From IMG/VR virus record IMGVR_UViG_3300017987_000001, positions 124,001 to 188,000 of that record: a DNA stretch of 64,000 bases, one strand, 5' to 3'. The position numbers were made by a program, and so were the translations under genes. Positions 3,628 through 49,210 of the stretch are shown here, piece by piece. Below the pieces are notes generated by a model, which saw nothing but the letters and a program-made list of their open reading frames with translations, was not told where the DNA came from and ran no database searches. The stretch's first letter is position 1, and every line of letters starts with the position of its first letter.

Positions 3628-5490
3628 CTAATACTTCGCCCCGGCCATCCCGTCGGGCTTAATCGGAGGCTTCCCGAACTCGGTCGTCTGCGCCAGCGAC
3701 GGAATGAACGATTCGCTGTGCTGCGCAGCTCCGAGGCCACGGTGCACCGATTGTAGCAGATTCTTTTTCAGATGGAAACCACCAAGTCGTACCATCCAAT
3801 CCTCGTTGTACCCCAGCGTCTCCATGGCGCGCACCATCTCCGGGGCGAACATCGGCTCGTCGGAGTGAGCCTTCACGGTCTTGAGTCCGCGCTTGTTGAT
3901 CTCAGCGGCAATGCGCGGCGTGATCTTCGTACCGATGGAGTACTGGAAGATCGGCTCCTCCAAGTACATGCCCACGGCACTCTTCGGTCGCATGGGCTTC
4001 GTACCCGTGCGCGGCTGATACTCGCGTGTGAGCGTGCTGAACTCTACCACATCATCGGGCAGCATGTCGGTGGTTCCGTCGGAGTCGACAATCCGTGCAT
4101 GGTTGATCAATCCGCGCGTCAGCAGCTCGATGTTCCGACGGTTCGCATCGATCTTGGTGGCCTTCAACGTGTTCCGGAAGTTGTTCATGAAGTGCCAGCG
4201 TCCGGCACCGATGCCCTTGTACTTCACAACCTCGGACGGGTTCGGCAAGCCTTCGCTCAATACGTCACCGGCCTCGATCTTGTCGCCGGGCACGACGGTC
4301 GGGTCGAACTCGGGCGCGACGTAGTGCTTCACGCCGCGCACGATAATGAAGTGACCGCCCTGCGGCGCTTTCTCGATGCCCTCGACAGTACCGTCGGTCT
4401 GCGCGATAGCCGCGCCGCCCATGAACGTACGTGGCACCTGAACGAGCTGGTTGATCGCATCGAAGCCGCCAGCGGTAGGACCAGCACCAACGACACCGCC
4501 GGTATGCTTCGAGGAGATAGCTGACTGCGTAATCGGCTCCGAGATAGCCTGTGCCGCTGCAACACCGACGTTGTCACCGATCTCGGGGAGCTTGCCCTTC
4601 TCGCGCACACCGACGCACCGGGCACACACACCATCGCGTGCCTGACACGTGAGCGGGCTGCGCACGATGATCTCTTTACCGTCACGCCCTATGCGCTTGG
4701 CTGCCTTCGTATCGATGATCGTATTCGCTTTGAAGCCCCCAGCGGGAGCTGCAAGGATCGAGCCAACGTTATCCGGGTCATCAGCGTCGACCGGGATGCC
4801 GTTGACCGTACCGCAATCATCCTCAGTGACGAGCAGCCGGTGAGATGCAAGCGCGAGCTGCTTGCCGAGAAAGCCGCCCTTCGGCGTGGCGAACTTGAGG
4901 TCGACCATGCCCTTTCGTGCCCCGTACGAGCCAGCCCAGTACTCGACTGGGTCCAGCCCCTCAGCGTACGAGTTGAGCAACGGGATCGGAACCGGGTTGC
5001 CTTTGTGGTCGGCCACGAGCAGGTCGCCGATGTTCGTCTGACTGAACTGAATCGGGTTGCCGCGTGCGCCGGAGTTGACCTGCATGGCGAGCGCGTTACG
5101 AAGGTCGAGCTGCTCTTGGAAGTTCAGTTTCCTAAGATCGTCGGCGCGCTTGCCGAGAAGTTTTATGACTCGCTCATTCTTTTGCTCATCGGTGAGCGGG
5201 GAGTTCAGAATCCTATTAACGCCACTACGTAGCTCGTCGCGAATCTTCTGTGCCTTCGGCCCTACAGTTAGAGAATCTAGGCTGATGGACGCCTCGCGGC
5301 CGTAGGTGGTAACCACCTCGGCCCCGAGGTCCATCATCTTCTTCGCGATCTCGTTGTACTGCTCCGGGTAGCGCTTCGCCACTTCGCGCAGGACCGTCTT
5401 GATCGTCTTCTTATTGATGGGACGATCGTAGTCCCGCATATCCGGCGGCAGGATGTCGTTGATCAGCAGTTGACCGACTGTAGTCTTCAC
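3628..5490 (-). CDS. rpoC: Multisubunit RNA polymerase beta' subunit, C-terminal half
   Basis: TTVGQ start, NSGARGN, bridge helix YGARKGMVD, EDDCGT, Zn site RSPLTC...CARC, trigger loop AAQAISEPITQ...KHTGG. Confidence 0.95.
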   Translation of the reverse strand: MKTTVGQLLINDILPPDMRDYDRPINKKTIKTVLREVAKRYPEQYNEIAKKMMDLGAEVVTTYGREASISLDSLTVGPKAQKIRDELRSGVNRILNSPLTDEQKNERVIKLLGKRADDLRKLNFQEQLDLRNALAMQVNSGARGNPIQFSQTNIGDLLVADHKGNPVPIPLLNSYAEGLDPVEYWAGSYGARKGMVDLKFATPKGGFLGKQLALASHRLLVTEDDCGTVNGIPVDADDPDNVGSILAAPAGGFKANTIIDTKAAKRIGRDGKEIIVRSPLTCQARDGVCARCVGVREKGKLPEIGDNVGVAAAQAISEPITQSAISSKHTGGVVGAGPTAGGFDAINQLVQVPRTFMGGAAIAQTDGTVEGIEKAPQGGHFIIVRGVKHYVAPEFDPTVVPGDKIEAGDVLSEGLPNPSEVVKYKGIGAGRWHFMNNFRNTLKATKIDANRRNIELLTRGLINHARIVDSDGTTDMLPDDVVEFSTLTREYQPRTGTKPMRPKSAVGMYLEEPIFQYSIGTKITPRIAAEINKRGLKTVKAHSDEPMFAPEMVRAMETLGYNEDWMVRLGGFHLKKNLLQSVHRGLGAAQHSESFIPSLAQTTEFGKPPIKPDGMAGAKY

Positions 5491-5494
5491 CGGC

Positions 5495-5884
5495 CTACCT
5501 CCAGTACGACTGCAGCGTAGCCTGCTGCTCCCAACGACGGAAGTCGAGCCACTCGGTCATCTCTCGCACGAAGGCCCGTACGATCTCCAGATCCTTGAAA
5601 ATGTAGTCCCCGCTGAGCAGGTTTTCAATGGCGAAGAGCTTGATTCCTATCTCGCTCTGGTCCGAGACGATACCGGTATCCCGCAGCTTGCGCACGAACC
5701 CAGCTATACGCTCATTGCGATTGCGCTTCGCATCATCCGGCAGCTCCTGCTCGCTCACCAGCGAGTTGATCGCCGACACAAGTGCGCGGTCATTCACTTC
5801 CTGCCGGTTACGAATGTTCGCCATCTTCCGCCGCTCTTCGATCGGAGGGATATCCATGAACGGTTCGTACTTGCGTGGCATCAC
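5495..5884 (-). CDS. Hypothetical protein (129 aa), shares a segment with the neighbouring gene
   Basis: ORF track; IFKDLEI motif shared with 5881-6642. Confidence 0.65.
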   Translation of the reverse strand: MMPRKYEPFMDIPPIEERRKMANIRNRQEVNDRALVSAINSLVSEQELPDDAKRNRNERIAGFVRKLRDTGIVSDQSEIGIKLFAIENLLSGDYIFKDLEIVRAFVREMTEWLDFRRWEQQATLQSYWR

Positions 5885-6642
5885 TCACCCCCGTCCACAG
5901 GCATGTTGAGGTAAGCGTTCCTGTACGCCTCAAGGTTGTCGCGCGTGACCGTGCCATAGCAGTTCCTCGACGGATCCAGTGTCTCCGTTACGCGCTCCAT
6001 GACCTTGTTGCACACGCGGCTGAGCATCCCCTTGCGTACGGTTGCCGGGATGAGGTTTCCGTTCTTGTCGGGTACGTCCATCTGCGGATTGCCGATCGTG
6101 AACTGCACCTGAATCTGCTCGATCGGCATGGCCGGAACGATCTCGACCTCCATCTCGATACGCCCTGTGTGCGCGTCAGTCTTCACCTTCTTGACGGTGT
6201 AGCCCGCCGGGTTGAACTTCTTGAGCTGCAACTCGTCGATGACAGTTCGAAGCTCGCGAAGGATCTCCAGATCCTTGAAGATGAGTCCTTCGCCCTCATA
6301 GAGACGCTCAACGACGAACTGGAACGCGCTGATCTGCACCTGCTCCTTGCCACCGTAGAGCTGAGCAAGCGTAACGATCAGCGAGATCGCGTCTGCGTGC
6401 GCCTCGTCGGGTGTCGTATACTCGTCTTCGAGAAGGCGATCGATTCCCTCACGCGCCTTTGCATACAACTCTACGTCTTGGAGCTGCGAAAGGGTCTCCT
6501 GCGCGCGTGAGCGCAACCGGTTCTCCATGTGCGTCACGAAACCAGCGCCCTGATTCACGCCAAGCCCCTTCGACACTTCCTTCTGAATGTCTATGAACAA
6601 CTGCTGCTTCAGCGACTGCATCGCGTCGAATGGCATTGCCAT
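5881..6642 (-). CDS. Hypothetical protein (253 aa)
   Basis: Start moved to MAMPFD (RBS GAGGAG); ATGA overlap with the downstream gene. Confidence 0.7.
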   Translation of the reverse strand: MAMPFDAMQSLKQQLFIDIQKEVSKGLGVNQGAGFVTHMENRLRSRAQETLSQLQDVELYAKAREGIDRLLEDEYTTPDEAHADAISLIVTLAQLYGGKEQVQISAFQFVVERLYEGEGLIFKDLEILRELRTVIDELQLKKFNPAGYTVKKVKTDAHTGRIEMEVEIVPAMPIEQIQVQFTIGNPQMDVPDKNGNLIPATVRKGMLSRVCNKVMERVTETLDPSRNCYGTVTRDNLEAYRNAYLNMPVDGGE

Positions 6643-6658
6643 CGCGACTCCTCTGCCG

Positions 6659-8152
6659 TTATACCGCTGGTGCCTTCTTCTTCGGAGGCTGCCCGGGCAA
6701 CGGCTCAGTCTTGGTTGGAGCAGGAGGCTGTTCGACATTGGCGCTCGCCGTAGCTGTATCACCCTGCGGCGCCTGCTCCGTCTCGGCTACCTGCGGCTTC
6801 TGCGGATCCTGCTGCTGTGTCGTTGGTTGAATCCAGTCAGTGCCTGCGGGCTGATTCACGCCCCACATATGCCCGCCCGGCGACTGGATCTGAATCGAAC
6901 CGCCTTCGGCCATCGTTCGGTTCGCCAAATCTTGGAAGCTGCGCTGGAACTTCTGCTCACGCTGCGCCACGGTCGAAGGCTGTGCAGGCTGTTGCGGCGG
7001 ACGCGCAACCGGCTGACGGCTGATTCCGCGCGTGCCCGCGCCCTGCCGCCCACGTCGAGAGCGCGGGGCGTAGCGTCCAGAGGTGAAGCCACTGTACGTA
7101 TGCCCTGCGGACTGACGCGGACCAACAAGCTCTTCATTCAGTCGACGCTGCTCGGTGGTTACATCGCGCGCGAAGTTGACGAGATCACCCATGCCGCCTT
7201 CGAGCTGGCTCGGGCCGCCCTCAGTCATGCGACGACTCGCTGCAGCGATCTGGCCGGGGCGGAAACGAATGCCTGCGCGAGCGAACAGCTGCTGCAGCGC
7301 ATCGCGGCGCTGGCCGTGCCGGTGCACCGCACGCACGGCCTCTTCACTGAAGCCTAGTCGCTTTGCTTCCTCATTCATGTGCTGAATGGTCTGCTCGCGC
7401 GTCGGAGGCTTCGGGCGAGTATCAGCGAACGGAGCGTCGGTCTTGGTGCGCTCCGTCGTAGTCGGCGCGGGATCACTGACCTGCACCGTCGAGCCCATCT
7501 CGCCGCCCTCGCCACCGCCGGAGAGCTTCTTGGCCTTCGCTTCGGCGGTAGCAACGTCGGTCGGCGCTTCGTCTGCCGCCGGTGTCGTCGTCGGCGGTGC
7601 TTCCGTAGAGTCAAGCGCGCCGTTGTACTGCGACTGGCCAGACTCCTCGTTCAATCGCTTCGCCTCTTCGAGCGAGGGTGCAACCTTGAACGTCTTTCCT
7701 GCCTCACTGGGCATACCATACGAATCGACGAAGCTCTGCGTAACCCAAACGATGTTCTCGGCGTGCGGGTTGATCGATTCGCCGCGCGCCATACGCCCCT
7801 GATTGAGTACTCCAAGGATCTGATCGATCGGAGCAGCTCCTTCTTCTTCAGCGGTCTTCTGGCGCTGCGCGAACCCGGCAGCGGCGTCGCTCTTCTCCTT
7901 GGCAAGCAGATTCTGTGGTGCCCACGAGCCACTCGTCGGTGCGCCATTCTCAGCGCGCTTGCACAGAAACTCACCGGCGGTCTTCACCTGCTGCTCGCGA
8001 TCGTTGAGAACCATCGACGCCACGATCTGCGCACCCGGTACTTCTGGCATAAGTAAGAGGTTGGCGAGCGAGAGCGCATCGTCGGTGTCGTAACCGGCGG
8101 ACTTGCAGAAGCGCAGCACGCCTGCGGTGAATGCCTGCTTACGTTCCATCAT
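6659..8152 (-). CDS. Putative internal virion protein, low complexity
   Basis: Start at MMERKQAF (RBS GGAGG); KQAF, KSAG, KTAG, KRAE motifs in the N-terminal region. Confidence 0.7.
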   Translation of the reverse strand: MMERKQAFTAGVLRFCKSAGYDTDDALSLANLLLMPEVPGAQIVASMVLNDREQQVKTAGEFLCKRAENGAPTSGSWAPQNLLAKEKSDAAAGFAQRQKTAEEEGAAPIDQILGVLNQGRMARGESINPHAENIVWVTQSFVDSYGMPSEAGKTFKVAPSLEEAKRLNEESGQSQYNGALDSTEAPPTTTPAADEAPTDVATAEAKAKKLSGGGEGGEMGSTVQVSDPAPTTTERTKTDAPFADTRPKPPTREQTIQHMNEEAKRLGFSEEAVRAVHRHGQRRDALQQLFARAGIRFRPGQIAAASRRMTEGGPSQLEGGMGDLVNFARDVTTEQRRLNEELVGPRQSAGHTYSGFTSGRYAPRSRRGRQGAGTRGISRQPVARPPQQPAQPSTVAQREQKFQRSFQDLANRTMAEGGSIQIQSPGGHMWGVNQPAGTDWIQPTTQQQDPQKPQVAETEQAPQGDTATASANVEQPPAPTKTEPLPGQPPKKKAPAV

Positions 8153-8369
8153 TGACGACCTCCGTCCGAGCCAGCTTGTCGACGCCATAGCGCTTGATGA
8201 CATCGTGGAACTTCTCATCGGAGCAGGTCGTGACGAGAACGTGGTCGGGGCTGACCTGCTCGATCGCAGCGATCGGCTGTCCGAAATTGTCGCGCACGAT
8301 CAGCCACGTCACGCTGCAGTCGAGCACGCGGCCATTGAGTACGCTGCCAATCTGGTAGGTCACCTGCAT
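8139..8369 (-). CDS. Small hypothetical protein (76 aa)
   Basis: ORF track; ATG directly follows the upstream TAG. Confidence 0.65.
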   Translation of the reverse strand: MQVTYQIGSVLNGRVLDCSVTWLIVRDNFGQPIAAIEQVSPDHVLVTTCSDEKFHDVIKRYGVDKLARTEVVNDGT

Positions 8370-8630
8370 CTACTCGTCCTCTTCGCTCTCACCGTTCGCT
8401 TCCTGCTCTGCCCTGAACGCTGCTTCCTGCCGATGCACATAGTCGGCGCACTTGATCTCGTAGGCGATAAGGTTCGCCGCACCCCGCATCATGGACGGAG
8501 TAGCGAGGAACTCCGTAGCAATCTCGCGAACCTTACTCACGAGGCTCGCGAAGCGTTCGTCCTTCTGCTCCCTCGCCTTCAGGTATCGAAGCGTCTTCGT
8601 CTGCTTCTCCGGTTCGTGGATTGGTCTCAT
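8370..8630 (-). CDS. Small hypothetical protein (86 aa)
   Basis: ORF track; ATG directly follows the upstream TAG. Confidence 0.65.
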   Translation of the reverse strand: MRPIHEPEKQTKTLRYLKAREQKDERFASLVSKVREIATEFLATPSMMRGAANLIAYEIKCADYVHRQEAAFRAEQEANGESEEDE

Positions 8631-9353
8631 CTACTTGCTCCGAAGGCCCGCGATGATGTCACCGATCTTCTTCGCCGACTTCACCTGCCCGAGTACGTCG
8701 CTCGCCGATGCGATCATCGGGTTCGGCATCTCCGGCAGCGGTTCGGTCGGGGAGAACGGAGGAGCGCCTGCGCCCATCTCCGGCATCATCGCAGCTACCT
8801 CGGGCGGGATCTCGGGGGCCGCGCCAACATCGCCCGGCGCAGCGGGACCGGCGCCCGGACCACCGCCGCCAATCGCCTCTTCAATGGCATCGAGACGCTG
8901 GGAGATCTTGTCGAGCGCCTTCGTCACGTCGGGAGAAGGCTCATTCGGAGCGCCCTCGCCACCGCCGCCCGCGCCACCCATCTCCGTCGCCACCTGCTGG
9001 AACAGCATGACGAGATCTTCGAGCGTCACGGTGATCGGCGTGCCGCCCTGCGCCATGGCCGGATCGGCTGGTGCGCCACCCGCCATCGCCGGATCCATCG
9101 GAGCACCCTGCGCCATCGCCGGGTCCATTGGTGCGCCGCCCGCCATAGCGGGATCCATGGGCGGAGCGCCACCCGCCATCGCCGGGTCCATCGGAGCACC
9201 CTGTGCGGGCGGAGCGCCACCCGCCATCGCCGGGTCCATCGGAGCACCCTGTGCGGGCGGAGCGCCCTGCGGAGGCGGCGCGAATGCATCCTTCTGTGTC
9301 ATGCTGGCAAGCGCTGCGAGCGCTTCCTTCGCCATGTTCGCATCGAAGTCCAT
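8631..9353 (-). CDS. Acidic Pro/Gly/Ala/Met-rich repeat protein (scaffold-like or internal virion protein)
   Basis: Start at MDFDANM (RBS AAAGGA); repeated GAPMDPAMAG units follow a KDAF motif. Confidence 0.7.
   Translation of the reverse strand: MDFDANMAKEALAALASMTQKDAFAPPPQGAPPAQGAPMDPAMAGGAPPAQGAPMDPAMAGGAPPMDPAMAGGAPMDPAMAQGAPMDPAMAGGAPADPAMAQGGTPITVTLEDLVMLFQQVATEMGGAGGGGEGAPNEPSPDVTKALDKISQRLDAIEEAIGGGGPGAGPAAPGDVGAAPEIPPEVAAMMPEMGAGAPPFSPTEPLPEMPNPMIASASDVLGQVKSAKKIGDIIAGLRSK
9049..9274. repeat. Coding tandem repeats (about 30 bp and 48 bp units) encoding GAPMDPAMAG
   Basis: Direct reading of the repeats. Confidence 0.85.
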
Positions 9354-9366
9354 GTCATGCGTCCTT

Positions 9367-9618
9367 TCATCCACCAACGCTTTGCCGTGCGTTGCGCCGT
9401 GCATCTACAACGCGCGCCCTCGATTTGCTCATCGCAGAAAGAAGCATTTCGATGAACCGTTGTTCTTCGCGCGTGTACTCGTTCGGAGCCTCGTCCGAAC
9501 CATTTGCCGCGAGATCACTTCGGGCGGTCAACGAGCTGAAGGGCACCGTCGGGTACGTCTTCAGCTGCGCCATCTTGCGCAATTGTTGAACGCGTCCAAA
9601 AATCTCGCGAAGCTTCAT
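9367..9618 (-). CDS. Small hypothetical protein (83 aa)
   Basis: Start at MKLREIF; TGATG overlap with the upstream stop. Confidence 0.6.
   Translation of the reverse strand: MKLREIFGRVQQLRKMAQLKTYPTVPFSSLTARSDLAANGSDEAPNEYTREEQRFIEMLLSAMSKSRARVVDARRNARQSVGG
9582..9603. promoter_or_regulatory. 22 bp palindrome copy 1 (ATTGTTGAACGCGTCCAAAAAT)
   Basis: Matches the consensus ATTGTTGGACGCGTCCAACAAT, seen 7 times in the window. Confidence 0.7.
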
Positions 9619-10310
9619 CAGTATCCGCCACCCTGTGCCGCGAACGGGTTCGGCGGAAGCCCGTAGCCAGCTTCCTGCGTCGCTGCCGCGAGCTGCGCAT
9701 CGTGCCCGCCCGGACCCATCTGCGGACCGGCCCACTGCTGCGGGCCGTAGTCGTACTGTTCGCCGCCCATACCAAGCCACTCAGGCGGCAGGAACATCGA
9801 CGCGAAGCCGAGCGTCTCAGCGCCGCCAAGCGCCGAGCGGCCAATACGCGCGGCCTGCCCGAGATTGCCGACGTTGGCCGGGTTCACGAGCTTGCCACCA
9901 GCGCGCGCCATAGCGCCCGGGTTCTTGAAGGTCTTGAGCAAGCGACTACCGGCACCGCTGAACCCGAGACGATTCAGGAGTCCGCCAAGCCCGCGCCCAC
10001 CGTACTGAACCGTCTTACCGATGTTGGTAGCGAGGCGGGTGGGTGTTCGACTCAGGAACTTGAGACCCAAGCCGCGCCCGAGCTTACCAATACCGCTGAG
10101 AAGCGGGCGTCCGAAGGCGAGAATCATCTGAAGCATCTGCGGATTGATGGCCTTCTTCTCCATCTTCGCCTGCTTCACAAGCCCAGCAAGCGCGACGGCC
10201 TGCGCCTTGACGAGCTTCTTGCGCACCTTCCGCTGACGTTGCTTCTTGTAGTCGCACGCGCGCTTCAGCACGAAGAGTGCCTCTTCTTTGGTCAGGATTG
10301 GCATCGGCAT
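9618..10310 (-). CDS. Putative virion protein, basic and Gly-rich (230 aa)
   Basis: ORF track; VKQAKMEKKAIN motif followed by amphipathic/Gly-rich segments. Confidence 0.7.
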   Translation of the reverse strand: MPMPILTKEEALFVLKRACDYKKQRQRKVRKKLVKAQAVALAGLVKQAKMEKKAINPQMLQMILAFGRPLLSGIGKLGRGLGLKFLSRTPTRLATNIGKTVQYGGRGLGGLLNRLGFSGAGSRLLKTFKNPGAMARAGGKLVNPANVGNLGQAARIGRSALGGAETLGFASMFLPPEWLGMGGEQYDYGPQQWAGPQMGPGGHDAQLAAATQEAGYGLPPNPFAAQGGGY

Positions 10311-10383
10311 CCTCCGATGCGCTGAATAGTTCTGCTCCGCATGAGCAATCTACTTGTTCAGCGCGAATGGCGCAAGAGTGATC

Positions 10384-11283
10384 TTACTTCTTGACCTTCC
10401 TGCGAGCGTACTTCTTCTTGCTGTGCTTTGGTCCGCACTTCGCGGACTTGTCACTCGACCCCTTGAACAGTTCGCTGCCGCCACCGATACCTGCGCCAGT
10501 GAGTCCGCCAAGCGCGAGCGAGCCAAGCGAAGGAGTCATGGAAATCTGATCGCCGATCCCCGGCATCTTGGCCTTGATAAGCAGCTTCGCGAGTAGTTCA
10601 GTCAGCGCTGCAGCCCCTGCTCCGCCAATCGCGCCACCGCCTGCGCCGCGACCAACGCGTCCCCAGTTCACGCCCTCATCCTTCTTTTCCTTCTTGTCGT
10701 CCTCGTCGGCAGCACGCTTACGGAACGCGAGCTTCTGCGCCATGCTGTCGAGCAGGTCGTGGCGGCCAAGCTCCTTGATCGCCGCCGCGACCTTCTTCAG
10801 TCGCTTGCGTCGACCGAGACCCATGAACGCCTGCTTGGTAGCCTCGTCCCGGAACTCGATCTTCAGTGGCATGGATAGGTTGAGCGCGCCCTGCGCGTCG
10901 ACCTTCGCATCCTCGATCGCTTCGACTAGCTCGTCGCAGAACGCGTTCGTGGCTTCCTTGGTGAGCGAGCCAGCCGTCAGCTTCGACAGCGCCTCGGATA
11001 GGCCGTAATCCTCGACGACAACCTCCTGCGCCTTCTGTGCGGCCGACTTGATCGTGACTGGGTGCTTGAACATGACCCTATTCCCTTCCAACGTTCCTCC
11101 CATGGCGGCGCAGGCAACTGCCGTTTCGAGATGCTCTGCAACCTTCGATAGCTCTATTTCGAGCGGCGGTACTTCTTCCTTCTTCCGTCCGACAAGGCTC
11201 TTCGTGAACTTGTCGGCAAGTACCCCCGCGATCTTGATATGATCGCCGGTAGCCTCAGAGATCACAAGATGGATATCACTCAT
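10384..11283 (-). CDS. Putative virion protein with C-terminal glycine zippers
   Basis: Start at MSDIHL (RBS GGAG); many KxA motifs; GAGGGAIGGAGAAAL and LALGGLTGAGIGGG segments. Confidence 0.7.
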   Translation of the reverse strand: MSDIHLVISEATGDHIKIAGVLADKFTKSLVGRKKEEVPPLEIELSKVAEHLETAVACAAMGGTLEGNRVMFKHPVTIKSAAQKAQEVVVEDYGLSEALSKLTAGSLTKEATNAFCDELVEAIEDAKVDAQGALNLSMPLKIEFRDEATKQAFMGLGRRKRLKKVAAAIKELGRHDLLDSMAQKLAFRKRAADEDDKKEKKDEGVNWGRVGRGAGGGAIGGAGAAALTELLAKLLIKAKMPGIGDQISMTPSLGSLALGGLTGAGIGGGSELFKGSSDKSAKCGPKHSKKKYARRKVKK

Positions 11284-11425
11284 CGGACTCACTCCTGTTC
11301 TTCCACGCCGCATCAAACTGCCGACGCCATATCCAGTGCCGCACGGTACTCGCGAGCGCCGGTGTTATCGCTACAACCAACAGAACAACTAGAAGAAAGA
11401 TGTTCAGGTTATCGGTATCGCTCAT
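11276..11425 (-). CDS. Small single-TM membrane protein (49 aa)
   Basis: Start at MSDTDN just after the RNAP stop; hydrophobic IFLLVVLLVVAITPALA. Confidence 0.55.
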   Translation of the reverse strand: MSDTDNLNIFLLVVLLVVAITPALASTVRHWIWRRQFDAAWKNRSESDE

Positions 11426-11426
11426 A

Positions 11427-14400
11427 TCACTTCCCGAACTGCACGGAGTCGCCCACGCGCAGTTCACCCCTCTTGTAAGCGCGCAGGACGTCGGCCTTCG
11501 ACATGAAGGTCTTCACACGCTTGTCCTTGGCCGTCGATGCGAGGTACAGCCCGTGCAGGAACTCCTGCCTTGGGAAGTAGTGCACGTCGAAGTCGGATGC
11601 CGCGAGGAGGTTCCGACTCGGCATCATCTTGTCGACCGCTTCTTCCACCGCCGCCTTGCTCACCGGCACATGGAAATTCATAGCGTCACCGTCGAAGTCG
11701 GCGTTGAATCCCGGCGTCACGATGGGCGGAATCTGCAGCGTGTTGCCCTTGGTGATGATTGGCCACGCCGCCATCATGCCGTAACGGTGAAGCACCGGCG
11801 CGCGGTTGATGATGACCGGCCGACGACCAGTCTCTTCGAGCAGCGCCTTGTACGCCACCTGATCCTGATTCTCGATCGCCTTGGCCGCAGCCATCGCGCC
11901 CATGCCGCGCCGAACGAGGTTGCGCATCACGAACGGACGGTAAAGCACCCACGCCTTGCTCTCGGGGAGGCCGACCTGATCCATGCCAAGACTGGGGTTC
12001 GGCGTGATCACGCCTCGACCAACGGTGTCGACAGCCGCCCCGAGCACCTTCTGCTGATACATGCCCAGCTTCGGGCTCGATCCGAAGATGTGGCGCAGCA
12101 AACCGCCGACCTGCTTCTCCTGCGTCTTCGCAGCGACCGGATCACCGAGACCCGTGACCGCCTTGTATGCCTTGTAGAGCCGCAGGCGCTCGTCACCAAG
12201 CTCGTCGTCGCCGAGATCGTTGCGCAGCTCGCGCAGGTCGTCGTTGACGCTCATGAGATCCGCGTAGAGGTAGTTCGGATCATCCACGAACGTCGTCTTG
12301 TTGAAGGTGGTGATCGGGCGGAAGTTCGGAGGAAGCACCGGAACCTTCGTCAGCATGAGGTCGGACGGCTTCTGTCCCGCCTGCTTCAGCGTGCGCAGGT
12401 AGCCAAGTACCTTCACGGCGTTATCGCGCTTCGCGCCGGTCGCCTCGCGCACCTGCGAGGAGTAGTGCTCGATCGCGTCGTCGACTTTGATACGCTTGAG
12501 CGCGCTCAGGATCGCCTTCGACCCGCGCTCACCGTTCAAGTCGTCGCGTCCGGCAATGATCCGCTCCAGCTTGTTCTGCGTCAGCCCGAGCATGCGGCGA
12601 ATCGGCTCTTCCATCACAGGATTCGGGATAGGCTCAGCGAGGTCGATGTGAGACCAGCGCGTGCCACCATGGCCGCCGGTGAGGCCGACATCGAAGAGGC
12701 CGCCCTTCACCGGCTCCATGGCGTCTCCCGTGACCGTGTCGTTCTTCTTGATCGGTCCGGCGGACATCTTATCGATGTCCTTATCCGTCATGGCAAACAG
12801 ATGCAGCTGCTCGCCCTTCTTCTTGAGGTTGATCCCCGACGCCTGAAGCATGCTCAGGAACTTGTCGTAGATCATCGGAACCTTCGGGCTTGCAGGCGTG
12901 TACCCGAGTCGGAGCGCACGCCAGAAGTCGTCATTGCGCTGCCCGCGCACGAGCTTGGCGTCGCGGATGACATCGGTCGCACCGTGGCTGATGAGCGCCA
13001 TCATCTCGCCGACGCCGATACGCTTCGAGCCTTCTTGGCCGCCACCTGCGGGCATGCCCTCAGCCGTGTACGAGCCGATGTCGCGGCCGGAGAGCTTCGG
13101 CTCGGCCATGTGGTGAAGCTTCATCATGTACGTGTAGCCCGTGAAGACCTTCGGGATCTTCCGACCGCTCACCGGATCATGGATATCCTCGGTGTCGCTC
13201 ATCCCGTGCTTCTGCAGTTCCTTCTTCGCGAGCGTGACATAGCTCTCGTCCATGAAGCCCGGCAGCTTGTAGGGCACGCCGGTCTTCTTCGCGATCTTGC
13301 CCAACGCGGTCTCGATGAGCTGCGCCGGGTTGATACGGCTCACGATGCCGAGCGACGACAGCGTGATGTCGAACGGCTTGCCGTCCTTGTCGTGCGGCAT
13401 CTGATCGTCGGGGATGATCTTCGAGATGACGCCCTTGCCGCCGTAGCGATTGGAGAGCTTGTCGCCGACGTGCATTGGCGAGTACGCCTTCACGATGACC
13501 TTCCAGCCCTCCTTCGTCTTGTCGACATCCGTGACCACGCCTTCCGACTCGTGATCCCACGTCTCGGACGCGTCGCTGTAGAGCGTCTTGCGTGCGCGCA
13601 GCATTCCGCCGCCAGACGGCTTACGCTTGGAGATCGACAGCACCAGCGGATCACCGAACTTCACCTTCGTGCCGATCTTCACGACGCCATTGTCATCGAT
13701 CGTCGACATCTGCTGCTTGTCAAAGGTGCCCGGATAGATCGACATATACGACTTCTTGCCTGCCTCCTGATTGTCAGACTGCTGGTACTTCGTCGTGTAC
13801 ATGTGCTCGCTGGCGAGACGCTTCGCAGCTGACTCACTGAGTACGAGCGCGTCATCGGCGTTGTACCCACGATATGGCAGGTATGCGACCTTCAGGTTCA
13901 TTCCGGAGGCCACTGCCCCTGTGTCGTCGGTGAAGTTGCTTCGAGCGAGCAGCTGACCGGGAGCGACAGGATCTCCAACTCGTACGACAGGAGTGTTGTG
14001 GAGGTAGGTCTTCCGGTTGAAGGGGAAGTTGTTATAGAGATCGTAAGAGACCTTCTCTCCGTCGGCATAGCGCACGACGACCTTATCCTTAGTGATCTCA
14101 GCAACCGACCCCATACCCTCTGCACGAACCGCACCAGCCCGATCACCATAGATCTCCTCGAAGCTGCGTCCCGAACCATCATCGGCGAGGTTCTGAACGA
14201 GCGGAGCCTCGGCATTGCGAAGCGGCAGCGCCTGCGTCGCCATCTTCGCGCCCATGAGCAGACGGCCACCCTTGATCGCACTGACCATGGGGACCATGTT
14301 CGCCGTCGCCGTGAACATGTGGCTCGTGTGCGGCAGCTCGAAGTCGACATCCTTACGCTTCACGTACGCGAGCTTCTTGCCACGGATCATCGCTCGCACT

Positions 14401-16925
14401 TCTTTGCCCTTGCGCGCAAGCTCGCCGGGGAATGCGATGATGCTCTTGGCCATCTTGCTGGCGCTGATGCGGCGCGGCTTGCCGGTCTTCGCGTCGAGCA
14501 TGTCAACGTAGATGTTCCCGTCCGAACCCTTGTACGTCCGGTGCGTGATGCGGCTGTCAACACCAATCTTCATGCCTTCGGGCGCACGAATGGGGTCGAT
14601 CACGCCGAAGTGCGACGGCTGCACGGCACGCGCTTCGTCGGGAACAGCGTCGAGACCGGGCATTCCGCCCTCACCCATGCGGGTGACGCGCACGAGCTGG
14701 TCGAAGATCTCAAGCGGGTTCACCTCTTCGAGCGGAGCTGCGAGACCGCTCTTGAGCAGCACAAGTCGAAGCTGCGGCGAGAGCGCGCCCGCCGGGAACT
14801 TCGAGACGTTGCCCTTGTTGGTAGCACGCCACAGCAGCTTACGGGACATGCCGCCAGCGTCACGGGCGATACGCTCGGCGAAGAGATCCTCGGGGCCGAA
14901 CACGCGCTGAAATGCGAGCGAGTCGCGATCGTCCGTATCCGCCTTGCGCTGGTTGATGTCGATGAGCTTCTTCGTGACTTCGGCGATCACTTCGGGCGAC
15001 AGCTTGTCGATCTTGCGGCCAAGCGTCATCTCGGTCGTGTCGGGGTCAACTTCCATCTTCTCGAAGACACCACGCATCTGAAGACCCATGTCATCATCCG
15101 CGCGCTTCTCCATCGCTGCGTCACGCCCCACGAACTGCACGAACGCGCGCTTGATCTCGTCGACCGGCAGCATGGCCTTCAGCTCTTCGAGCGTGGTGAA
15201 GCGGCGCGGAAGCGTCTTCTCCTTCTTCACGGCTTTGAGCTGCTTCTCGACCTTCGCCTGATCGGCCGCCGGGTTGCCCTTGATGTCCTGATTGGCCTGC
15301 TGCTGACGCTCGATCAGCTGCATCGGCTCTTCGTTCTCCATCATCTCTTCGGCGGGCATCGACATGTCGACAACATCGGCGAGCTTCGTCGCCATCGCGC
15401 TCTTGACGAGCGTGTCGGAGATCGCTTCCTCAATCGCGTTCGTCACGGCAAGGAACGCGTTGGCCGTCTTCTCCTCGACGCCGTCGAACAGCGCTGCGAT
15501 CTTCGAAGCGCCACGCGGCTGCTTCTTGGGCTTCACGGCGACGGTGATGTGGAACTGGAACTCCTTGCCGCTGTCATCGCCGCGCGGAAGCTCCTCGAAT
15601 CCGAGCGACTTGCGATGAGCACGCAGCTCGGGCGACTTCGCTTCGAGGAACCATACGCGATCCATCTCATCCCAGCCCTCGGGGTCGAGATCGACGATGG
15701 CGTTCTGCAAACTGAAGGGGAACTTGCGGCCATTACCGCATGCGGTCTTCCACTTCTTGCCGTACTTCCCGATCAGCTGCTTCGCTTCCCAGTTGCGCAG
15801 AACGCTGATGTGCGGGAGATCGAAGCGCGACTCGCAGTCGACGTCCTGATCCTTCAGCGCCTGATACGCAGCCTCGGGCAGTCCCTTGTGGATCTTGAGG
15901 TACGCCCACGGCTTGTCCGAATCCGAATCGTCGCATACCAGCTCGCCGACGAACTTCGCGCGGCGGCGGTTACCTTCCTCGTCCTCCTGCGCAGCCTTGG
16001 CGAACTTGAACTCGCTGCCCACCCAGAGCATGCACCAGCCGGTCGGCGCGACGAAGCCCTGCACCCGGCGGCACGCGTTGACGCCGTTGAAGTTCTTGCA
16101 GCTGGAGCACTGCTGGAAGAATCCCGACATCGTGTAGTTCACGTCGCCCTTGGAGGTCTTGCCGTAGCCGACGTGCTCCTCGGAGTAGCCAAAGAACGCT
16201 GCCTTCTCGGTAGCGTCGGTGTCCTGCTGCTCGGGAGGGGTCTCCTCGGGCTTCTTCGAAACAAGCTTGTGATACGCGCGCTGAACGGCACGCGGGTCGG
16301 ACGCAGCAACGTTCGCCTGCAGCAGGTCCGGTCCCCACGTCTCGTTGAGCTTGCGGTCGTCGTAACCCATCGAGCGAAGGATCGGATAGAGCTTGAGGTT
16401 CGCCTGCCCGACGTTCATGCGGAAGACGCCGGTCTCCGGCTCCATGTAGACCCTGAAGCTGCGCCCCGTGCCACCCTTGACGTTAAAGTGGGCCTCGATG
16501 ATGCCGTTGTCCTTAACTCGACTGTAGATGCCGGGGCGCAGCCTCATTTGGGACGCTACGGTATACTCGTTGCCGTTGAAGACGAACGTACCACGATCGG
16601 TGAGATACGGAACCTGAGCGATGAGCCGTTGGTTAGTCTTGTCGACAATCTTGCCGGATGCGTTATCGACAAGTTCCCACCGACCAGCGAGCTTCCATCC
16701 GAGCGTCTGGCCGCGCATGATCGCCCGCTTCTGCTCGGAGTTGGTGTACTGCTTCGGCTTCACGTACTTCACGTCGTTCAGCCGCAGCGTGTAGCGCTGG
16801 TTCGTCATCGGGAAGCGCTCTTCGATCGCCTTCTGCACGTTCGTGAACAGAAGCTGGCGCGTCGAGCGCACGTCGTCGAACTCACGCATCGTAGGTTCGT
16901 TGGGAGCAGCGATTACGTCGGCCAT
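11427..16925 (-). CDS. rpoBC: Multisubunit RNA polymerase: beta fused to N-terminal half of beta', with a ~370 aa internal insertion
   Basis: beta motifs GTFVFNG, HFGVIDPIRAPEG, RLLMGAKM, GYNADD, GDKLSNRYGGKG, YMMKLHH. beta' motifs VPVLPPNFRP, NRAPVLH and catalytic NADFDGD. Confidence 0.97.
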   Translation of the reverse strand: MADVIAAPNEPTMREFDDVRSTRQLLFTNVQKAIEERFPMTNQRYTLRLNDVKYVKPKQYTNSEQKRAIMRGQTLGWKLAGRWELVDNASGKIVDKTNQRLIAQVPYLTDRGTFVFNGNEYTVASQMRLRPGIYSRVKDNGIIEAHFNVKGGTGRSFRVYMEPETGVFRMNVGQANLKLYPILRSMGYDDRKLNETWGPDLLQANVAASDPRAVQRAYHKLVSKKPEETPPEQQDTDATEKAAFFGYSEEHVGYGKTSKGDVNYTMSGFFQQCSSCKNFNGVNACRRVQGFVAPTGWCMLWVGSEFKFAKAAQEDEEGNRRRAKFVGELVCDDSDSDKPWAYLKIHKGLPEAAYQALKDQDVDCESRFDLPHISVLRNWEAKQLIGKYGKKWKTACGNGRKFPFSLQNAIVDLDPEGWDEMDRVWFLEAKSPELRAHRKSLGFEELPRGDDSGKEFQFHITVAVKPKKQPRGASKIAALFDGVEEKTANAFLAVTNAIEEAISDTLVKSAMATKLADVVDMSMPAEEMMENEEPMQLIERQQQANQDIKGNPAADQAKVEKQLKAVKKEKTLPRRFTTLEELKAMLPVDEIKRAFVQFVGRDAAMEKRADDDMGLQMRGVFEKMEVDPDTTEMTLGRKIDKLSPEVIAEVTKKLIDINQRKADTDDRDSLAFQRVFGPEDLFAERIARDAGGMSRKLLWRATNKGNVSKFPAGALSPQLRLVLLKSGLAAPLEEVNPLEIFDQLVRVTRMGEGGMPGLDAVPDEARAVQPSHFGVIDPIRAPEGMKIGVDSRITHRTYKGSDGNIYVDMLDAKTGKPRRISASKMAKSIIAFPGELARKGKEVRAMIRGKKLAYVKRKDVDFELPHTSHMFTATANMVPMVSAIKGGRLLMGAKMATQALPLRNAEAPLVQNLADDGSGRSFEEIYGDRAGAVRAEGMGSVAEITKDKVVVRYADGEKVSYDLYNNFPFNRKTYLHNTPVVRVGDPVAPGQLLARSNFTDDTGAVASGMNLKVAYLPYRGYNADDALVLSESAAKRLASEHMYTTKYQQSDNQEAGKKSYMSIYPGTFDKQQMSTIDDNGVVKIGTKVKFGDPLVLSISKRKPSGGGMLRARKTLYSDASETWDHESEGVVTDVDKTKEGWKVIVKAYSPMHVGDKLSNRYGGKGVISKIIPDDQMPHDKDGKPFDITLSSLGIVSRINPAQLIETALGKIAKKTGVPYKLPGFMDESYVTLAKKELQKHGMSDTEDIHDPVSGRKIPKVFTGYTYMMKLHHMAEPKLSGRDIGSYTAEGMPAGGGQEGSKRIGVGEMMALISHGATDVIRDAKLVRGQRNDDFWRALRLGYTPASPKVPMIYDKFLSMLQASGINLKKKGEQLHLFAMTDKDIDKMSAGPIKKNDTVTGDAMEPVKGGLFDVGLTGGHGGTRWSHIDLAEPIPNPVMEEPIRRMLGLTQNKLERIIAGRDDLNGERGSKAILSALKRIKVDDAIEHYSSQVREATGAKRDNAVKVLGYLRTLKQAGQKPSDLMLTKVPVLPPNFRPITTFNKTTFVDDPNYLYADLMSVNDDLRELRNDLGDDELGDERLRLYKAYKAVTGLGDPVAAKTQEKQVGGLLRHIFGSSPKLGMYQQKVLGAAVDTVGRGVITPNPSLGMDQVGLPESKAWVLYRPFVMRNLVRRGMGAMAAAKAIENQDQVAYKALLEETGRRPVIINRAPVLHRYGMMAAWPIITKGNTLQIPPIVTPGFNADFDGDAMNFHVPVSKAAVEEAVDKMMPSRNLLAASDFDVHYFPRQEFLHGLYLASTAKDKRVKTFMSKADVLRAYKRGELRVGDSVQFGK
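15520..15960 (-). other. 2H phosphoesterase-like domain inserted in RNAP beta
   Basis: Two H-x-[ST]-hydrophobic motifs: PHISVL (H372) and FHITVAV (H459), 87 aa apart. Confidence 0.75.
16023..16146 (-). other. HiPIP-like 4-Cys (putative Fe-S) domain inserted in RNAP beta
   Basis: CSSC-x8-C-x11-WC-x2-W (..PTGWCMLW) matches the HiPIP cysteine spacing. Confidence 0.65.
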
Positions 16926-21816: not shown

Positions 21817-21842
21817 TGCAGGCTCCTGTCAAAGCCCGTGCA

Positions 21843-22412: not shown

Positions 22413-22413
22413 G

Positions 22414-32297: not shown

Positions 32298-32298
32298 G

Positions 32299-49135: not shown

Positions 49136-49210
49136 TGGAACGTCCGGCGGGGGTCGAACCCGCATCTTGCGCCTTTAGAGAGCGCCGCACTCCCATTGTG
49201 CTACGGACGT
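49136..49210 (-). tRNA. tRNA with CUA anticodon (amber suppressor), CCA encoded
   Basis: Manual cloverleaf: ACGTCCG/CGGACGT acceptor, GCAC/GTGC D arm, GCGCT-CTCTAAA-GGCGC anticodon arm, GCGGG-TTCGACC-CCCGC T arm, U73, CCA; 75 nt. Confidence 0.93.

What the first reader, a model, noticed from the sequence alone, without database searches (positions are those of the whole stretch)
3628..16925. Unusual RNAP architecture: beta-beta' fusion, beta' split, N-terminal Zn ribbon deleted, halves 5.9 kb apart
Seen: beta runs straight into beta' (ASGINL...GGLFD) and the chain ends about 75 aa after NADFDGD. The remaining beta' starts at MKTTVGQ in a separate gene at 3628-5490. The beta' Cys4 zinc-binding domain is replaced by a short GGHGG link. 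No alpha, omega or sigma gene was recognised. Established: some tailed phages encode bacterial-like multisubunit RNAPs; the cyanobacterial beta' split falls just after the TTxG motif, whereas here it is just before. Inference: an independently rearranged phage RNAP with both halves of the active centre on one chain.
Basis: partly seen in the sequence, partly recalled or inferred. Interest (0 to 1): 0.68.

Follow-up and report, generated by a model that had tools for sequence, protein, structure and literature searches.

The report
Phage RNA polymerase with fused subunits
A complete 208-kb phage genome encodes its own bacterial-type RNA polymerase in two chains (the whole beta subunit fused to the first half of beta', plus the second half of beta'), and this layout is shared by a large, almost unstudied group of phages rather than being a one-off.

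Summary
Window 11427-16925 (-) encodes 1832 aa in which complete beta runs into beta' and stops 85 aa after NADFDGD. Window 3628-5490 (-) encodes the rest of beta' (620 aa). The beta' Cys4 zinc domain is replaced by GGHGG.

It is not a private rearrangement:
- All 120 best database relatives carry the same beta-to-beta' junction.
- So do Salmonella phage Arash and Vibrio phages D69/D181/D148.
- A sister group in IMG/VR has all of beta and beta' in one ORF of about 2,050-2,200 aa.
- The split falls at the same residue in every split lineage examined.
- On a beta' tree the clade lies outside the sampled Bacteria.

The genome has one RNAP set and no detectable alpha or omega. Outside the window it has a sigma70-like gene, and a model places that protein on the beta' clamp helices (0.67 against 0.00 for controls). 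In Arash the two homologues and this sigma are abundant in virions.

The most likely reading is a virion-carried, sigma-dependent, alpha-less RNAP.

This copy also has a 377-aa insert in beta. It holds a 2H phosphoesterase domain (well supported) and a HiPIP-like Cys4 module (sequence profile only).

I found no paper describing this architecture. I rate it a new variant of a known kind.

The parts
11427..16925 (-). Fusion gene (1832 aa): beta N-terminal part, 377-aa insert, beta core, then the first 460 aa of beta'. The ATG at 16925 overlaps the TGA of the upstream gene, and GGAGGA lies upstream.
16227..16925 (-). Beta N-terminal module (aa 1-233). It is a separate 287-aa gene in relative L010 and is absent from 19 of the 120 best relatives' fusion proteins.
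16011..16148 (-). HiPIP-like Cys4 module (aa ~260-305; C273, C276, C285, C298), invariant in 16 relatives. Assignment rests on a sequence profile only.
   Evidence: fold attempt failed
15519..15956 (-). 2H phosphoesterase domain (aa 324-469) with both catalytic motifs (H372-x-S, H459-x-T).
15096..15518 (-). Helical, charged linker of the insert (aa 470-610). No fold assigned; low model confidence.
12810..15095 (-). Beta core (aa 611-1372), including the barrel and flap region, running to the native beta C-terminus.
12606..12842 (-). Beta-to-beta' junction (aa 1362-1440). The beta C-terminal motif ASGINL is followed by about 10 extra residues, and beta' then enters at about its residue 22.
12663..12677 (-). 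GGHGG (aa 1417-1421), standing where the beta' Cys4 zinc-binding domain should be.
12126..12314 (-). Beta' clamp helices (aa 1538-1600), the predicted docking site of the phage sigma-like protein.
11685..11705 (-). NADFDGD catalytic motif (aa 1741-1747).
3628..5490 (-). Beta' C-terminal gene (620 aa; GTG start with GGAGG 7 nt upstream). It holds the bridge helix, trigger loop and the second zinc site (C226, C282, C289, C292).
8631..9404 (-). Gene X between the two RNAP genes (257 aa, Gly/Ala/Pro/Met repeats). It holds this position in 8 loci. Function unknown, and I do not claim it is an RNAP subunit.
8139..8369 (-). Gene Y between the two RNAP genes (76 aa). It holds this position in 6 loci. 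Function unknown, and I do not claim it is an RNAP subunit.

Best explanation
These two genes encode the catalytic core of a phage-specific, bacterial-type multisubunit RNA polymerase built from two chains. Chain 1 carries beta and the N-terminal 460 aa of beta', so both active-site barrels are covalently linked. Chain 2 carries the rest of beta' (bridge helix, trigger loop, jaw and second zinc site).

Shown here:
- The architecture is inherited within a large phage clade.
- The genome holds one RNAP set, no detectable alpha or omega, and one sigma70-like gene.

Inferred:
1. The covalent beta-beta' link replaces the alpha-dimer assembly platform.
2. The core uses the phage sigma-like protein, bound to the beta' clamp helices, to start at phage promoters.
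3. As in phage Arash, core and sigma are packed in the virion and delivered with the DNA, so early transcription does not need host RNAP. The rifampicin-pocket residues are substituted, which would fit insensitivity to that drug.
4. The 2H phosphoesterase domain inserted in beta rides into the cell with the polymerase. It acts either on nucleotide immune signals, as the phage enzyme Acb1 does, or on RNA ends.
For: Identity of the proteins: Pfam and PDB matches, an alignment through the junction, and retained catalytic and second-zinc-site residues.

Clade-wide architecture:
- All 120 best relatives carry the junction.
- About 46 of 80 IMG/VR loci have beta core and beta'N in one ORF. Of these, 16 have beta'C 34-7,368 nt downstream and 23 have it in the same ORF.
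- Arash gp206/gp216 and Vibrio phage D69 share the layout.
- The split point is identical across lineages.

Phage origin:
- Bacteria plus Patescibacteria form their own group (SH-aLRT 96).
- The fusion group has support 87. Holding all 53 fusion rows together is not rejected (p-AU 0.44).

Genome content: one beta and one beta' set; no alpha or omega.

Sigma:
- Pfam Sigma70_r3 scores 27.1 bits, above its 25.3 cut-off; PHROG sigma family E 1.5e-11.
- 25% identity to Arash gp10, E 5e-16. The gp10-gp12-gp13 gene order is kept.
- Homologues lie on contigs of the same lengths as those carrying fusion RNAPs, so probably the same contigs.
- Complex model ipSAE 0.67 against a best control of 0.00. That mark was reached by 58 of 80 solved complexes and 2 of 110 mismatched pairs. 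Runs agree in at least 41% of contacts, partner pLDDT at least 68. The interface is the canonical clamp-helix/sigma region 2 site.

Virion packing: in Arash, gp206 is the most-detected virion protein (3,516 spectra), gp216 has 1,210 and sigma gp10 has 467 (PMC10585845).

2H domain:
- Both catalytic histidines are invariant in 28 homologues.
- Model pLDDT is above 90 across the domain.
- The top 43 structural matches are all 2H enzymes; the best is phage Acb1 (Z 7.2, rmsd 3.0, 107 aa).
Against: - Virion packing is shown only for Arash, which is about 30% identical. Abundant cytoplasmic proteins can contaminate virion preparations, as the Arash authors themselves note.
- The sigma complex pass may reflect the model's memory of solved sigma-beta' complexes, and my own alignments were used. 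The sigma could instead serve host RNAP.
- A divergent alpha or omega substitute would escape Pfam.
- No shared promoter motif was found.
- With only one RNAP set, it is unclear how early and late transcription are told apart.
- The 2H matches have only middling Z scores, and the Pfam 2H hit is below its cut-off (19.4 against 27 bits).
- The tree uses few bacterial phyla and no cyanobacteria.
Confidence: 0.75

Rival explanations
1. The polymerase is not carried in the virion in this phage. It is made after infection and transcribes middle or late genes. Host RNAP, possibly redirected by the phage sigma-like protein, does the early work.
For: Nothing in this genome directly shows packing. Many large phages encode sigma factors that redirect host RNAP (PMC7824862). 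There is only one RNAP set, whereas phiKZ-type phages need two. Unlike Arash, the portal gene is not adjacent here; it lies at window 33903-36677.
Against: The homologues are the most-detected virion proteins of Arash, along with the homologous sigma. The genes sit among homologues of Arash structural proteins gp218-gp220. The sigma is predicted to dock on the phage's own clamp helices.
Confidence: 0.2
2. The genes are a recent capture of a bacterial rpoBC operon by one phage, rearranged afterwards.
For: The order beta then beta' matches bacterial operons. Identity to bacterial subunits is about 27-34%.
Against: Solved bacterial beta subunits from very different phyla score about equally (216-237 bits). 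The tree separates the clade from Bacteria and Patescibacteria. The fusion, zinc-domain loss and split site are shared by relatives as low as about 30% identity. The 11 related contigs in bacterial genome bins come from unrelated phyla and look like mis-binned phage.
Confidence: 0.03
3. The fusion or the split is an assembly, frameshift or gene-calling artefact.
For: The source is a single metagenome-derived contig.
Against: The same junction is present in all 120 best relatives and in isolated, independently sequenced phages. The split genes have their own ribosome-binding sites and stop/start arrangement. The split point is identical in many contigs. Peptides from both Arash proteins were detected separately.
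Confidence: 0.01

Closest known systems
Salmonella phage Arash gp206 + gp216 (and Vibrio phages D69, D181, D148)
   Same: Beta fused to beta'N in one gene, and beta'C in a second gene downstream on the same strand. Same split residue, no Cys4 zinc domain, and a homologous sigma-like gene.
   Different: Only about 29-33% identical. Arash and D69 lack the 377-aa insert (1,525 aa against 1,832). In Arash the portal gene is immediately upstream. The published annotation calls gp206 simply 'beta subunit' and does not mention the fusion.
phiKZ / AR9-type jumbo-phage multisubunit RNAPs
   Same: Phage-encoded beta/beta' homologues. Beta' is split after the catalytic barrel, there is no alpha or omega, and a virion-carried form exists (PMC7598289, PMC7824862).
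   Different: Those enzymes are broken into 4-5 polypeptides, come in two paralogous sets and have no sigma homologue. Here beta is whole and fused to beta', there is one set, and a sigma70-like gene is present. This clade is also much closer to bacterial enzymes: the 60 best PDB matches are all labelled as ordinary RNA polymerase beta or beta' subunits, and the entries I recognise are cellular.
Cyanobacterial and plastid RpoC1/RpoC2 split
   Same: Beta' is broken in the same variable loop between the catalytic barrel and the TTVG segment.
   Different: The break is about 11 residues further downstream in cyanobacteria. Cyanobacteria keep beta separate and keep alpha and omega (general knowledge). 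All bacterial beta' checked here keep the zinc domain, though no cyanobacterial sequence was among them. Common descent could not be tested.
Natural rpoB-rpoC fusions of Helicobacter and Wolbachia, and engineered E. coli fusions (from my own knowledge, not tested here)
   Same: The beta C-terminus is joined to the beta' N-terminus in one polypeptide, which shows the link is compatible with activity.
   Different: Those enzymes keep full-length beta', the zinc domain, alpha and omega, and they are cellular.
Fully fused beta-beta' single-ORF RNAPs in IMG/VR (for example L023, L027, L053)
   Same: Sister group on the tree. Same beta-to-beta' junction and no zinc domain.
   Different: Beta' is continuous, reading straight through the point where this phage has a stop and a new start. 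One ORF of about 2,020-2,200 aa. They are uncultured and, as far as I could find, undescribed.
mReC, the RNAP-encoding Caudovirales of Weinheimer and Aylward 2020 (PMC7481178)
   Same: Metagenomic tailed phages whose beta/beta' are alignable with cellular enzymes but branch outside them.
   Different: The paper treats beta and beta' as two subunits and mentions fusion only for crAssphage. Its capsids are Gp23-type, which this genome lacks by Pfam. Whether the two sets overlap could not be settled.
Acb1, viral 2H phosphodiesterases and HiPIP/PioC (for the insert only)
   Same: 2H fold with two catalytic His motifs. The spacing of the four Cys matches HiPIP cluster ligands.
   Different: Those are free-standing small proteins. 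Here the domains are inserted in the RNAP beta subunit. No activity or cofactor is known for them.

Membership tests
Bacterial-type multisubunit RNAP catalytic core | Beta catalytic barrel region (Pfam Rpb2 domain 6) | tested here: met
   E 6e-58, 197 bits; aligns to solved beta chains over about 800 aa.
Bacterial-type multisubunit RNAP catalytic core | Beta' catalytic barrel with NADFDGD | tested here: met
   Rpb1 domain 2, E 3e-25; motif at aa 1741-1747.
Bacterial-type multisubunit RNAP catalytic core | Bridge helix, trigger loop and second zinc site in beta' | tested here: met
   Aligned in the 620-aa protein. C226, C282, C289 and C292 match Salmonella C814, C888, C895 and C898.
Bacterial-type multisubunit RNAP catalytic core | N-terminal Cys4 zinc-binding domain of beta' | tested here: not met
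   Replaced by GGHGG. Absent in 76 of 76 clade members and present in all bacterial beta' checked.
Bacterial-type multisubunit RNAP catalytic core | Alpha dimer and omega subunits | tested here: not met
   No PF01193 or PF01192 match in the whole genome; both rang in all 14 control genomes. A very divergent substitute is not excluded.
Bacterial-type multisubunit RNAP catalytic core | Sigma70-family initiation factor | tested here: met
   260-aa protein outside the window with Sigma70_r3 above its cut-off and a PHROG sigma match. Binding to the phage core is predicted only.
phiKZ/AR9-type jumbo-phage RNAP | Beta' split after the catalytic barrel | tested here: met
   described in PMC7598289.
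phiKZ/AR9-type jumbo-phage RNAP | Beta split into two or three polypeptides | tested here: not met
   Beta is continuous in this phage. Its N-terminal module is a separate gene in relative L010.
phiKZ/AR9-type jumbo-phage RNAP | Two paralogous sets (virion and non-virion) | tested here: not met
   One beta and one beta' locus in the genome.
phiKZ/AR9-type jumbo-phage RNAP | No sigma homologue | tested here: not met
   A sigma70-like gene is present.
Arash-like beta-beta'N fusion clade (unnamed) | Beta C-terminus continues into beta' in one ORF | tested here: met
Arash-like beta-beta'N fusion clade (unnamed) | Beta' broken immediately before the TTVG segment | tested here: met
   Same point in P0001/P0002, Arash, D69, L011, L018, L024 and L030.
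Arash-like beta-beta'N fusion clade (unnamed) | Both chains and the sigma present in virions | not testable with these tools
   Shown by mass spectrometry for Arash only.
Cyanobacterial/plastid RpoC1-RpoC2 type | Identical split point | tested here: not met
   Offset of about 11 residues.
Cyanobacterial/plastid RpoC1-RpoC2 type | Phylogenetic nesting with cyanobacteria | not tested
   No cyanobacterial sequence was available to put on the tree.
mReC (PMC7481178) | Gp23-type major capsid protein (PF07068) | tested here: not met
   No match in the genome. The control rang weakly in only one genome, so this is a weak test.
2H phosphoesterase superfamily (insert, aa 324-469) | Two H-x-T/S motifs | tested here: met
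   H372-x-S and H459-x-T. Both His and the Thr are invariant in 28 homologues.
2H phosphoesterase superfamily (insert, aa 324-469) | 2H fold | tested here: met
   Model pLDDT above 90. The top 43 VIA rows are all 2H enzymes, with Z up to 7.2.
2H phosphoesterase superfamily (insert, aa 324-469) | Pfam model above its cut-off | tested here: inconclusive
   2H-SAK scores 19.4 bits against a cut-off of 27 for this protein. The family is precomputed on many relatives.
HiPIP (insert, aa ~260-305) | Four cluster-ligand Cys in HiPIP spacing, with the GWC motif | tested here: met
   Invariant in 16 sequences. The four best profile hits in PDB are all HiPIPs; the best is PioC, E 1.2e-4. A fifth, non-HiPIP hit at E 2.2 has no significant aligned stretch.
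HiPIP (insert, aa ~260-305) | Pfam model above cut-off / HiPIP fold | tested here: inconclusive
   PF01355 scores 16.8 bits against a cut-off of 22, and only for a relative. The AlphaFold model has pLDDT 52 and is unusable.
HiPIP (insert, aa ~260-305) | Binds a 4Fe-4S cluster | not testable with these tools
   Needs spectroscopy.

The most novel reading that the evidence does not exclude
This clade may be a natural minimal bacterial-type RNAP. It would assemble from one or two chains without alpha or omega, use its own sigma, and be injected from the virion. In this sub-lineage the beta subunit would double as a carrier for enzymatic cargo: a 2H phosphodiesterase that could destroy nucleotide immune signals on entry, and a HiPIP-like iron-sulfur module. 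Relatives carry acetyltransferase or SET domains in the same protein. That would make the polymerase a combined transcription and counter-defence device. It would also give structural biologists a single-chain, bacterial-like RNAP.
Probability: 0.3. Interest if true: 0.8.

Novelty: new variant of a known kind. Interest (0 to 1): 0.6.

Why it matters
Cellular RNAPs need the alpha dimer to bring beta and beta' together. phiKZ-type phage enzymes manage without alpha, and how they do so is an open question (PMC7598289). This clade suggests a simple answer, a covalent link between the two subunits. Its enzymes remain close enough to bacterial RNAP to be modelled and compared residue by residue.

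The clade contains every intermediate: beta in two pieces, beta fused to half of beta', and everything in one chain. That makes it a natural series for studying how large subunits split and fuse.

It also pairs a phage core with a phage sigma, which phiKZ-type enzymes lack. A culturable member, Salmonella phage Arash, makes the ideas directly testable.

The enzymatic domains inserted in beta hint that virion polymerases can deliver other activities into the cell.

Tried and rejected
- Megablast of the region against isolated phages gave no match.
- Pfam and PHROG scans of the genes lying between and beside the RNAP genes found nothing that suggests an RNAP subunit.
- Gene X, conserved between the two halves, was considered as an alpha substitute. 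I rejected this because it is a low-complexity Gly/Ala/Pro/Met repeat protein. Gene Y (76 aa) has no omega-like signal.
- K-mer searches of intergenic and upstream regions for a shared promoter motif found nothing convincing (one search failed to return).
- The Sigma70_r2 Pfam model finds nothing in the genome. The sigma was found only through the Arash homologue.
- The search for a T7-type single-subunit RNAP (PF00940) was uninformative because the control genomes did not ring either.
- AlphaFold on the Cys4 module alone gave pLDDT 52, so no fold search was run on it.
- Foldseek on the whole insert gave only borderline E-values. The VIA re-alignment was more telling.
- Patescibacteria appeared as the nearest bacterial beta' in the pattern-based genome scan, but the tree groups them with other Bacteria and not with the phage clade.
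- The reads tools and the large representative search were not used, because no claim here rests on absence of relatives.
Full report
**What the window is.** The window is bases 124001-188000 of a single 207,857-bp contig with 59.7% G+C. It is an IMG/VR virus record with direct terminal repeats, rated 100% complete. Nearly all genes around the finding are on the minus strand.

**Check of the observation.**
- ORF 11427-16925 (-) encodes 1832 aa.
- Pfam places beta domains (Rpb2 domain 3 at aa 732-793; Rpb2 domain 6 at 939-1287, E 6e-58) and beta' domains (Rpb1 domain 1 at 1510-1570; Rpb1 domain 2 at 1629-1765, E 3e-25) on this one chain.
- Against solved structures, aa 592-1388 match beta and aa 1467-1827 match beta' residues 193-559 of one bacterial enzyme.
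- Blastp aligns aa 1372 with the very last residue of Salmonella RpoB.
- A MAFFT alignment of 16 family members with the Salmonella beta C-terminus and beta' N-terminus covers the junction. The beta C-terminal motif (ASGINL, aa 1362) is followed by about ten extra residues. Beta' then enters at about its residue 22.
- In the same alignment the Cys4 zinc-binding domain is replaced by GGHGG (aa 1417-1421).
- NADFDGD is at aa 1741-1747 and the chain ends 85 residues later.
- ORF 3628-5490 (-) encodes 620 aa with Rpb1 domains 4 and 5. It matches residues 578-1102 of the same solved beta' chain, so almost nothing is lost at the break.
- That gene starts with GTG, seven bases after GGAGG and four bases after the stop of the gene upstream. 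The fusion gene's ATG overlaps the stop of its upstream neighbour.
- The bridge helix, the trigger loop and the four Cys of the second zinc site are retained.

**It is a family trait, not a private rearrangement.**
- A tblastn search of isolated phages finds the same layout in Salmonella phage Arash and in Vibrio phages D69, D181 and D148.
- In Arash, gp206 (1,525 aa, annotated only as 'beta subunit') is followed nine annotated genes later by gp216 (606 aa). In D69 the two genes are 0.6 kb apart.
- Identities to the window proteins are 33% and 29%.
- The word-based protein search returned 1,764 proteins at E <= 1e-10. All of the 120 best carry both beta and beta' Pfam domains. All 120 contain the junction segment in my segment-by-segment blast.
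- A scan of IMG/VR with a beta'N profile gave 80 loci. I analysed them ORF by ORF. About 46 have beta core and beta'N in one frame.
- In 16 of those, beta'C lies 34 to 7,368 nt downstream on the same strand.
- In 23, beta'C is in the same ORF. That gives a single polypeptide of about 2,020-2,200 aa, longer where inteins are present.
- None of 76 clade members has the CxC...CxxC zinc domain, and 64 have no Cys at all in that stretch. Every bacterial and Patescibacteria beta' examined has it, as do Rhizobium phage RHph_TM30 and one phage of another group.

**The split point.** I aligned the fully fused proteins with the ends and starts of the split ones.
- The fused forms read straight through, with at most a few residues between the end of the beta'N tail and the TTVG/TTIG segment.
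- Every split lineage examined stops and restarts at that same point: the window's clade, Arash/D69 and an intermediate group. L054 ends its N-terminal part a little earlier.
- Bacterial beta' has a variable insertion there, so the break lies in a surface loop.
- Residue 7 of the cyanobacterial beta' chain 8gzg_Z aligns with residue 18 of the window protein.
- The published view is that phiKZ-type virion and non-virion enzymes and cyanobacteria all break beta' after the catalytic barrel (PMC7598289). This clade uses the same inter-domain region.

**Phylogeny.** I built a quick IQ-TREE tree (LG+C20+F+G4) of 353 beta'N columns for 82 sequences.
- Bacteria plus Patescibacteria fall in one group (SH-aLRT 96).
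- 52 of the 53 fusion sequences fall in another (support 87). The window's sub-clade has support 99. Its sister group holds Arash/D69, the intermediate split group and the fully fused group (support 97).
- One long-branched fused sequence fell outside. Forcing all 53 together costs 2.1 log-likelihood units and is not rejected (p-AU 0.44).
- The split/unsplit state needs three changes on this tree. Since the break is at the same residue in the split lineages, one old split followed by re-fusion in the fused group is at least as likely as repeated splitting. I cannot decide between these.
- Bacterial sampling is thin: Salmonella, Staphylococcus, one actinobacterium, one gammaproteobacterium, two planctomycetes and eight Patescibacteria. 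There are no cyanobacteria.
- Solved bacterial beta chains from distant phyla score almost equally against the window protein (216-237 bits), which also argues against a recent donor.
- Eleven clade-type contigs sit in genome bins of unrelated phyla, one of them archaeal. They look like mis-binned phage, so they give no host.

**Other subunits.**
- The genome has one beta and one beta' locus.
- There is no alpha or omega match, while the same searches rang in all 14 control genomes.
- The Sigma70_r2 model finds nothing.
- Arash gp10, annotated as a sigma factor, has a 260-aa homologue at G000:C1:69920-70702 (-), with 25% identity and E 5e-16. Homologues of Arash gp12 and gp13 lie beside it in the same order.
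- That protein scores above the Pfam cut-off for sigma region 3, shows a weak region 4, and matches a PHROG sigma family at E 1.5e-11.
- It has 197 homologues. Several lie on contigs whose lengths match those carrying fusion RNAPs (for example 210,759, 204,045 and 175,775 bp), so they are probably the same contigs.
- A complex prediction of beta'N with this protein scored ipSAE 0.67 (runs 0.65-0.68) against 0.00 for the best of three controls. That mark was reached by 58 of 80 solved complexes and 2 of 110 mismatched pairs. The runs agree in at least 41% of contacts and the partner's pLDDT is at least 68.
- The confident contacts are aa 1538-1600 of the fusion protein, which are the clamp helices just after VLPPNFRP, and residues 43-80 and 112-119 of the sigma.
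- This is the canonical interface. The tool warns that such a pass may come from memory of solved sigma-core complexes, and my own alignments were used. I count it as support, not proof.

**Virion association.** In the Arash paper gp206 is the protein detected most in virions (3,516 spectra). gp216 has 1,210 and sigma gp10 has 467. The authors suggest a role in early transcription but also note possible carry-over of abundant proteins (PMC10585845). In the window, the RNAP genes lie in a long minus-strand block with homologues of Arash structural proteins gp218-gp220 just downstream. The portal homologue is at 33903-36677. Packing in this phage is an inference.

**The insert in beta.**
- Relative to Arash and D69, the window protein has 377 extra residues (aa 234-610) between the beta N-terminal module and the beta core.
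- This boundary is a hot spot across the 120 best relatives: 53 have no insert; 30 have a 2H domain there; 17 share the full insert of the window protein; 19 begin with the 2H domain and lack the N-terminal module; the last one is a truncated fragment.
- In one relative (L010, a 204-kb contig), the N-terminal module is a separate 287-aa gene 1.9 kb upstream. That enzyme therefore has three chains.
- Other relatives carry acetyltransferase or SET domains, and inteins.
- An AlphaFold model of the insert is confident (pLDDT above 90) only for aa 324-469.
- Foldseek's best hits are 2H enzymes. On re-alignment with VIA-align the top 43 rows are all 2H phosphoesterases. The leaders are phage anti-CBASS Acb1 (Z 7.2, rmsd 3.0, 107 aa), a Thermus LigT-like protein, a poxvirus cGAMP phosphodiesterase, coronavirus ns2 and Usb1. 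All lie within one Z unit, so the sub-family is open.
- Both catalytic histidines are invariant in 28 homologues.
- Upstream of the 2H domain, four Cys (273, 276, 285, 298) with a GWC motif are invariant in 16 relatives.
- A profile of this module has four HiPIPs as its best PDB hits (PioC E 1.2e-4; others 0.007 to 1.1), with all four cluster ligands aligned. A fifth hit at E 2.2 is an unrelated uncharacterised protein with no significant aligned stretch.
- Pfam HIPIP is below its cut-off and appears only for a relative. The module alone could not be modelled. The HiPIP likeness is a lead, not a finding.

**Between the two genes.** Two genes keep their place between the RNAP halves in the window's clade. 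One is a 257-aa repeat protein (8631-9404) found in 8 loci. The other is a 76-aa protein (8139-8369) found in 6 loci. Neither shows any sign of being an RNAP subunit.

**Literature.**
- Searches of open full text found no description of a beta-beta'N fusion in phages.
- Weinheimer and Aylward describe RNAP-encoding Caudovirales as having beta and beta' subunits. They mention fusion only for crAssphage. Their phages have Gp23-type capsids, which this genome lacks by Pfam.
- Iyer and colleagues and Sokolova and colleagues describe only the fragmented phiKZ-type enzymes.
- Subscription journals were not searchable, so prior description cannot be excluded.

**Verdict.** I rate it a new variant of a known kind, with interest 0.6. 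A culturable relative and a ready-made series of split and fused forms make the questions testable.

Noticed in passing
window 49136-49210 (-): A tRNA with anticodon CUA, an amber suppressor that ARAGORN labels 'Pyl'. Rfam tRNA scores it 63 bits. The genome has 38 tRNA genes, yet TAG ends 61 of 159 long ORFs in my crude gene calls, so wholesale recoding is not evident.
   Followed up: partly
IMG/VR loci L023, L027-L029, L031, L033, L036-L041, L044, L045, L048-L051, L053, L055-L057, L060: Phage contigs with all of beta and beta' in one ORF of about 2,020-2,200 aa (up to about 3,000 aa with inserts). They are the sister group of the window's clade.
   Followed up: partly
L010:7222-8085 and L010:10001-14233: In a 204-kb relative the beta N-terminal module is a separate 287-aa gene 1.9 kb upstream of a gene encoding 2H domain, beta core and beta'N. 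That RNAP is in three pieces.
   Followed up: yes
relatives P0007, P0009, P0011, P0015-P0017, P0026 and others; Vibrio phages D181/D148 (hits H2, H3): Inteins or LAGLIDADG domains lie inside the fusion gene of many relatives. A homing endonuclease interrupts the gene in two Vibrio phages. Mobile elements seem to target these genes, which may be how splits arise.
   Followed up: no
L042, L046, L047, L052: A few IMG/VR relatives end the beta'N reading frame only 13-28 residues after NADFDGD, or lose the match at about that point (L042). This could be a second break point or an intervening element.
   Followed up: no
relatives P0003, P0004 (GNAT); P0031, P0034, P0037, P0040, P0045 (SET): Some relatives carry acetyltransferase or SET methyltransferase domains in the fusion protein. 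Where within the protein they sit was not mapped. This fits a general use of the polymerase as a carrier of enzymatic cargo.
   Followed up: no
window 12810-15095 (-), aa 721-740 of the fusion protein: The rifampicin-pocket positions equivalent to E. coli Q513, D516, H526 and S531 read A, E, Q and T. The enzyme may be insensitive to rifampicin. This is an inference from the alignment only.
   Followed up: partly
window 8631-9404 (-) and 8139-8369 (-): A Gly/Ala/Pro/Met repeat protein and a 76-aa protein keep their place between the two RNAP genes in several relatives. The repeat protein has 442 database relatives, none with a function.
   Followed up: partly
window 19843-24955 and 30984-32396 (-): Near the RNAP genes lie a ligase-like protein (19843-21816), two methyltransferases (21843-22412, 23948-24955), an NAD-dependent sugar epimerase (22414-23343) and a UDP-glucose dehydrogenase (30984-32396). 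They may form a sugar or DNA-modification module.
   Followed up: no
L091-L101 (genome contigs): Contigs of this phage clade are binned into metagenome-assembled genomes of unrelated phyla (Gemmataceae, Nanopelagicales, Methylococcales, Thermoguttaceae and a Thermoplasmata archaeon). This looks like mis-binning and gives no host information.
   Followed up: partly
L182 (Cobetia phage Carin-5), L183 (Rhizobium phage RHph_TM30): Other isolated phages carry bacterial-like RNAP genes in a different layout. Carin-5 has separate sigma, beta and beta' genes in a row. TM30 has an unsplit 1,127-aa beta' that keeps the zinc domain.
   Followed up: partly
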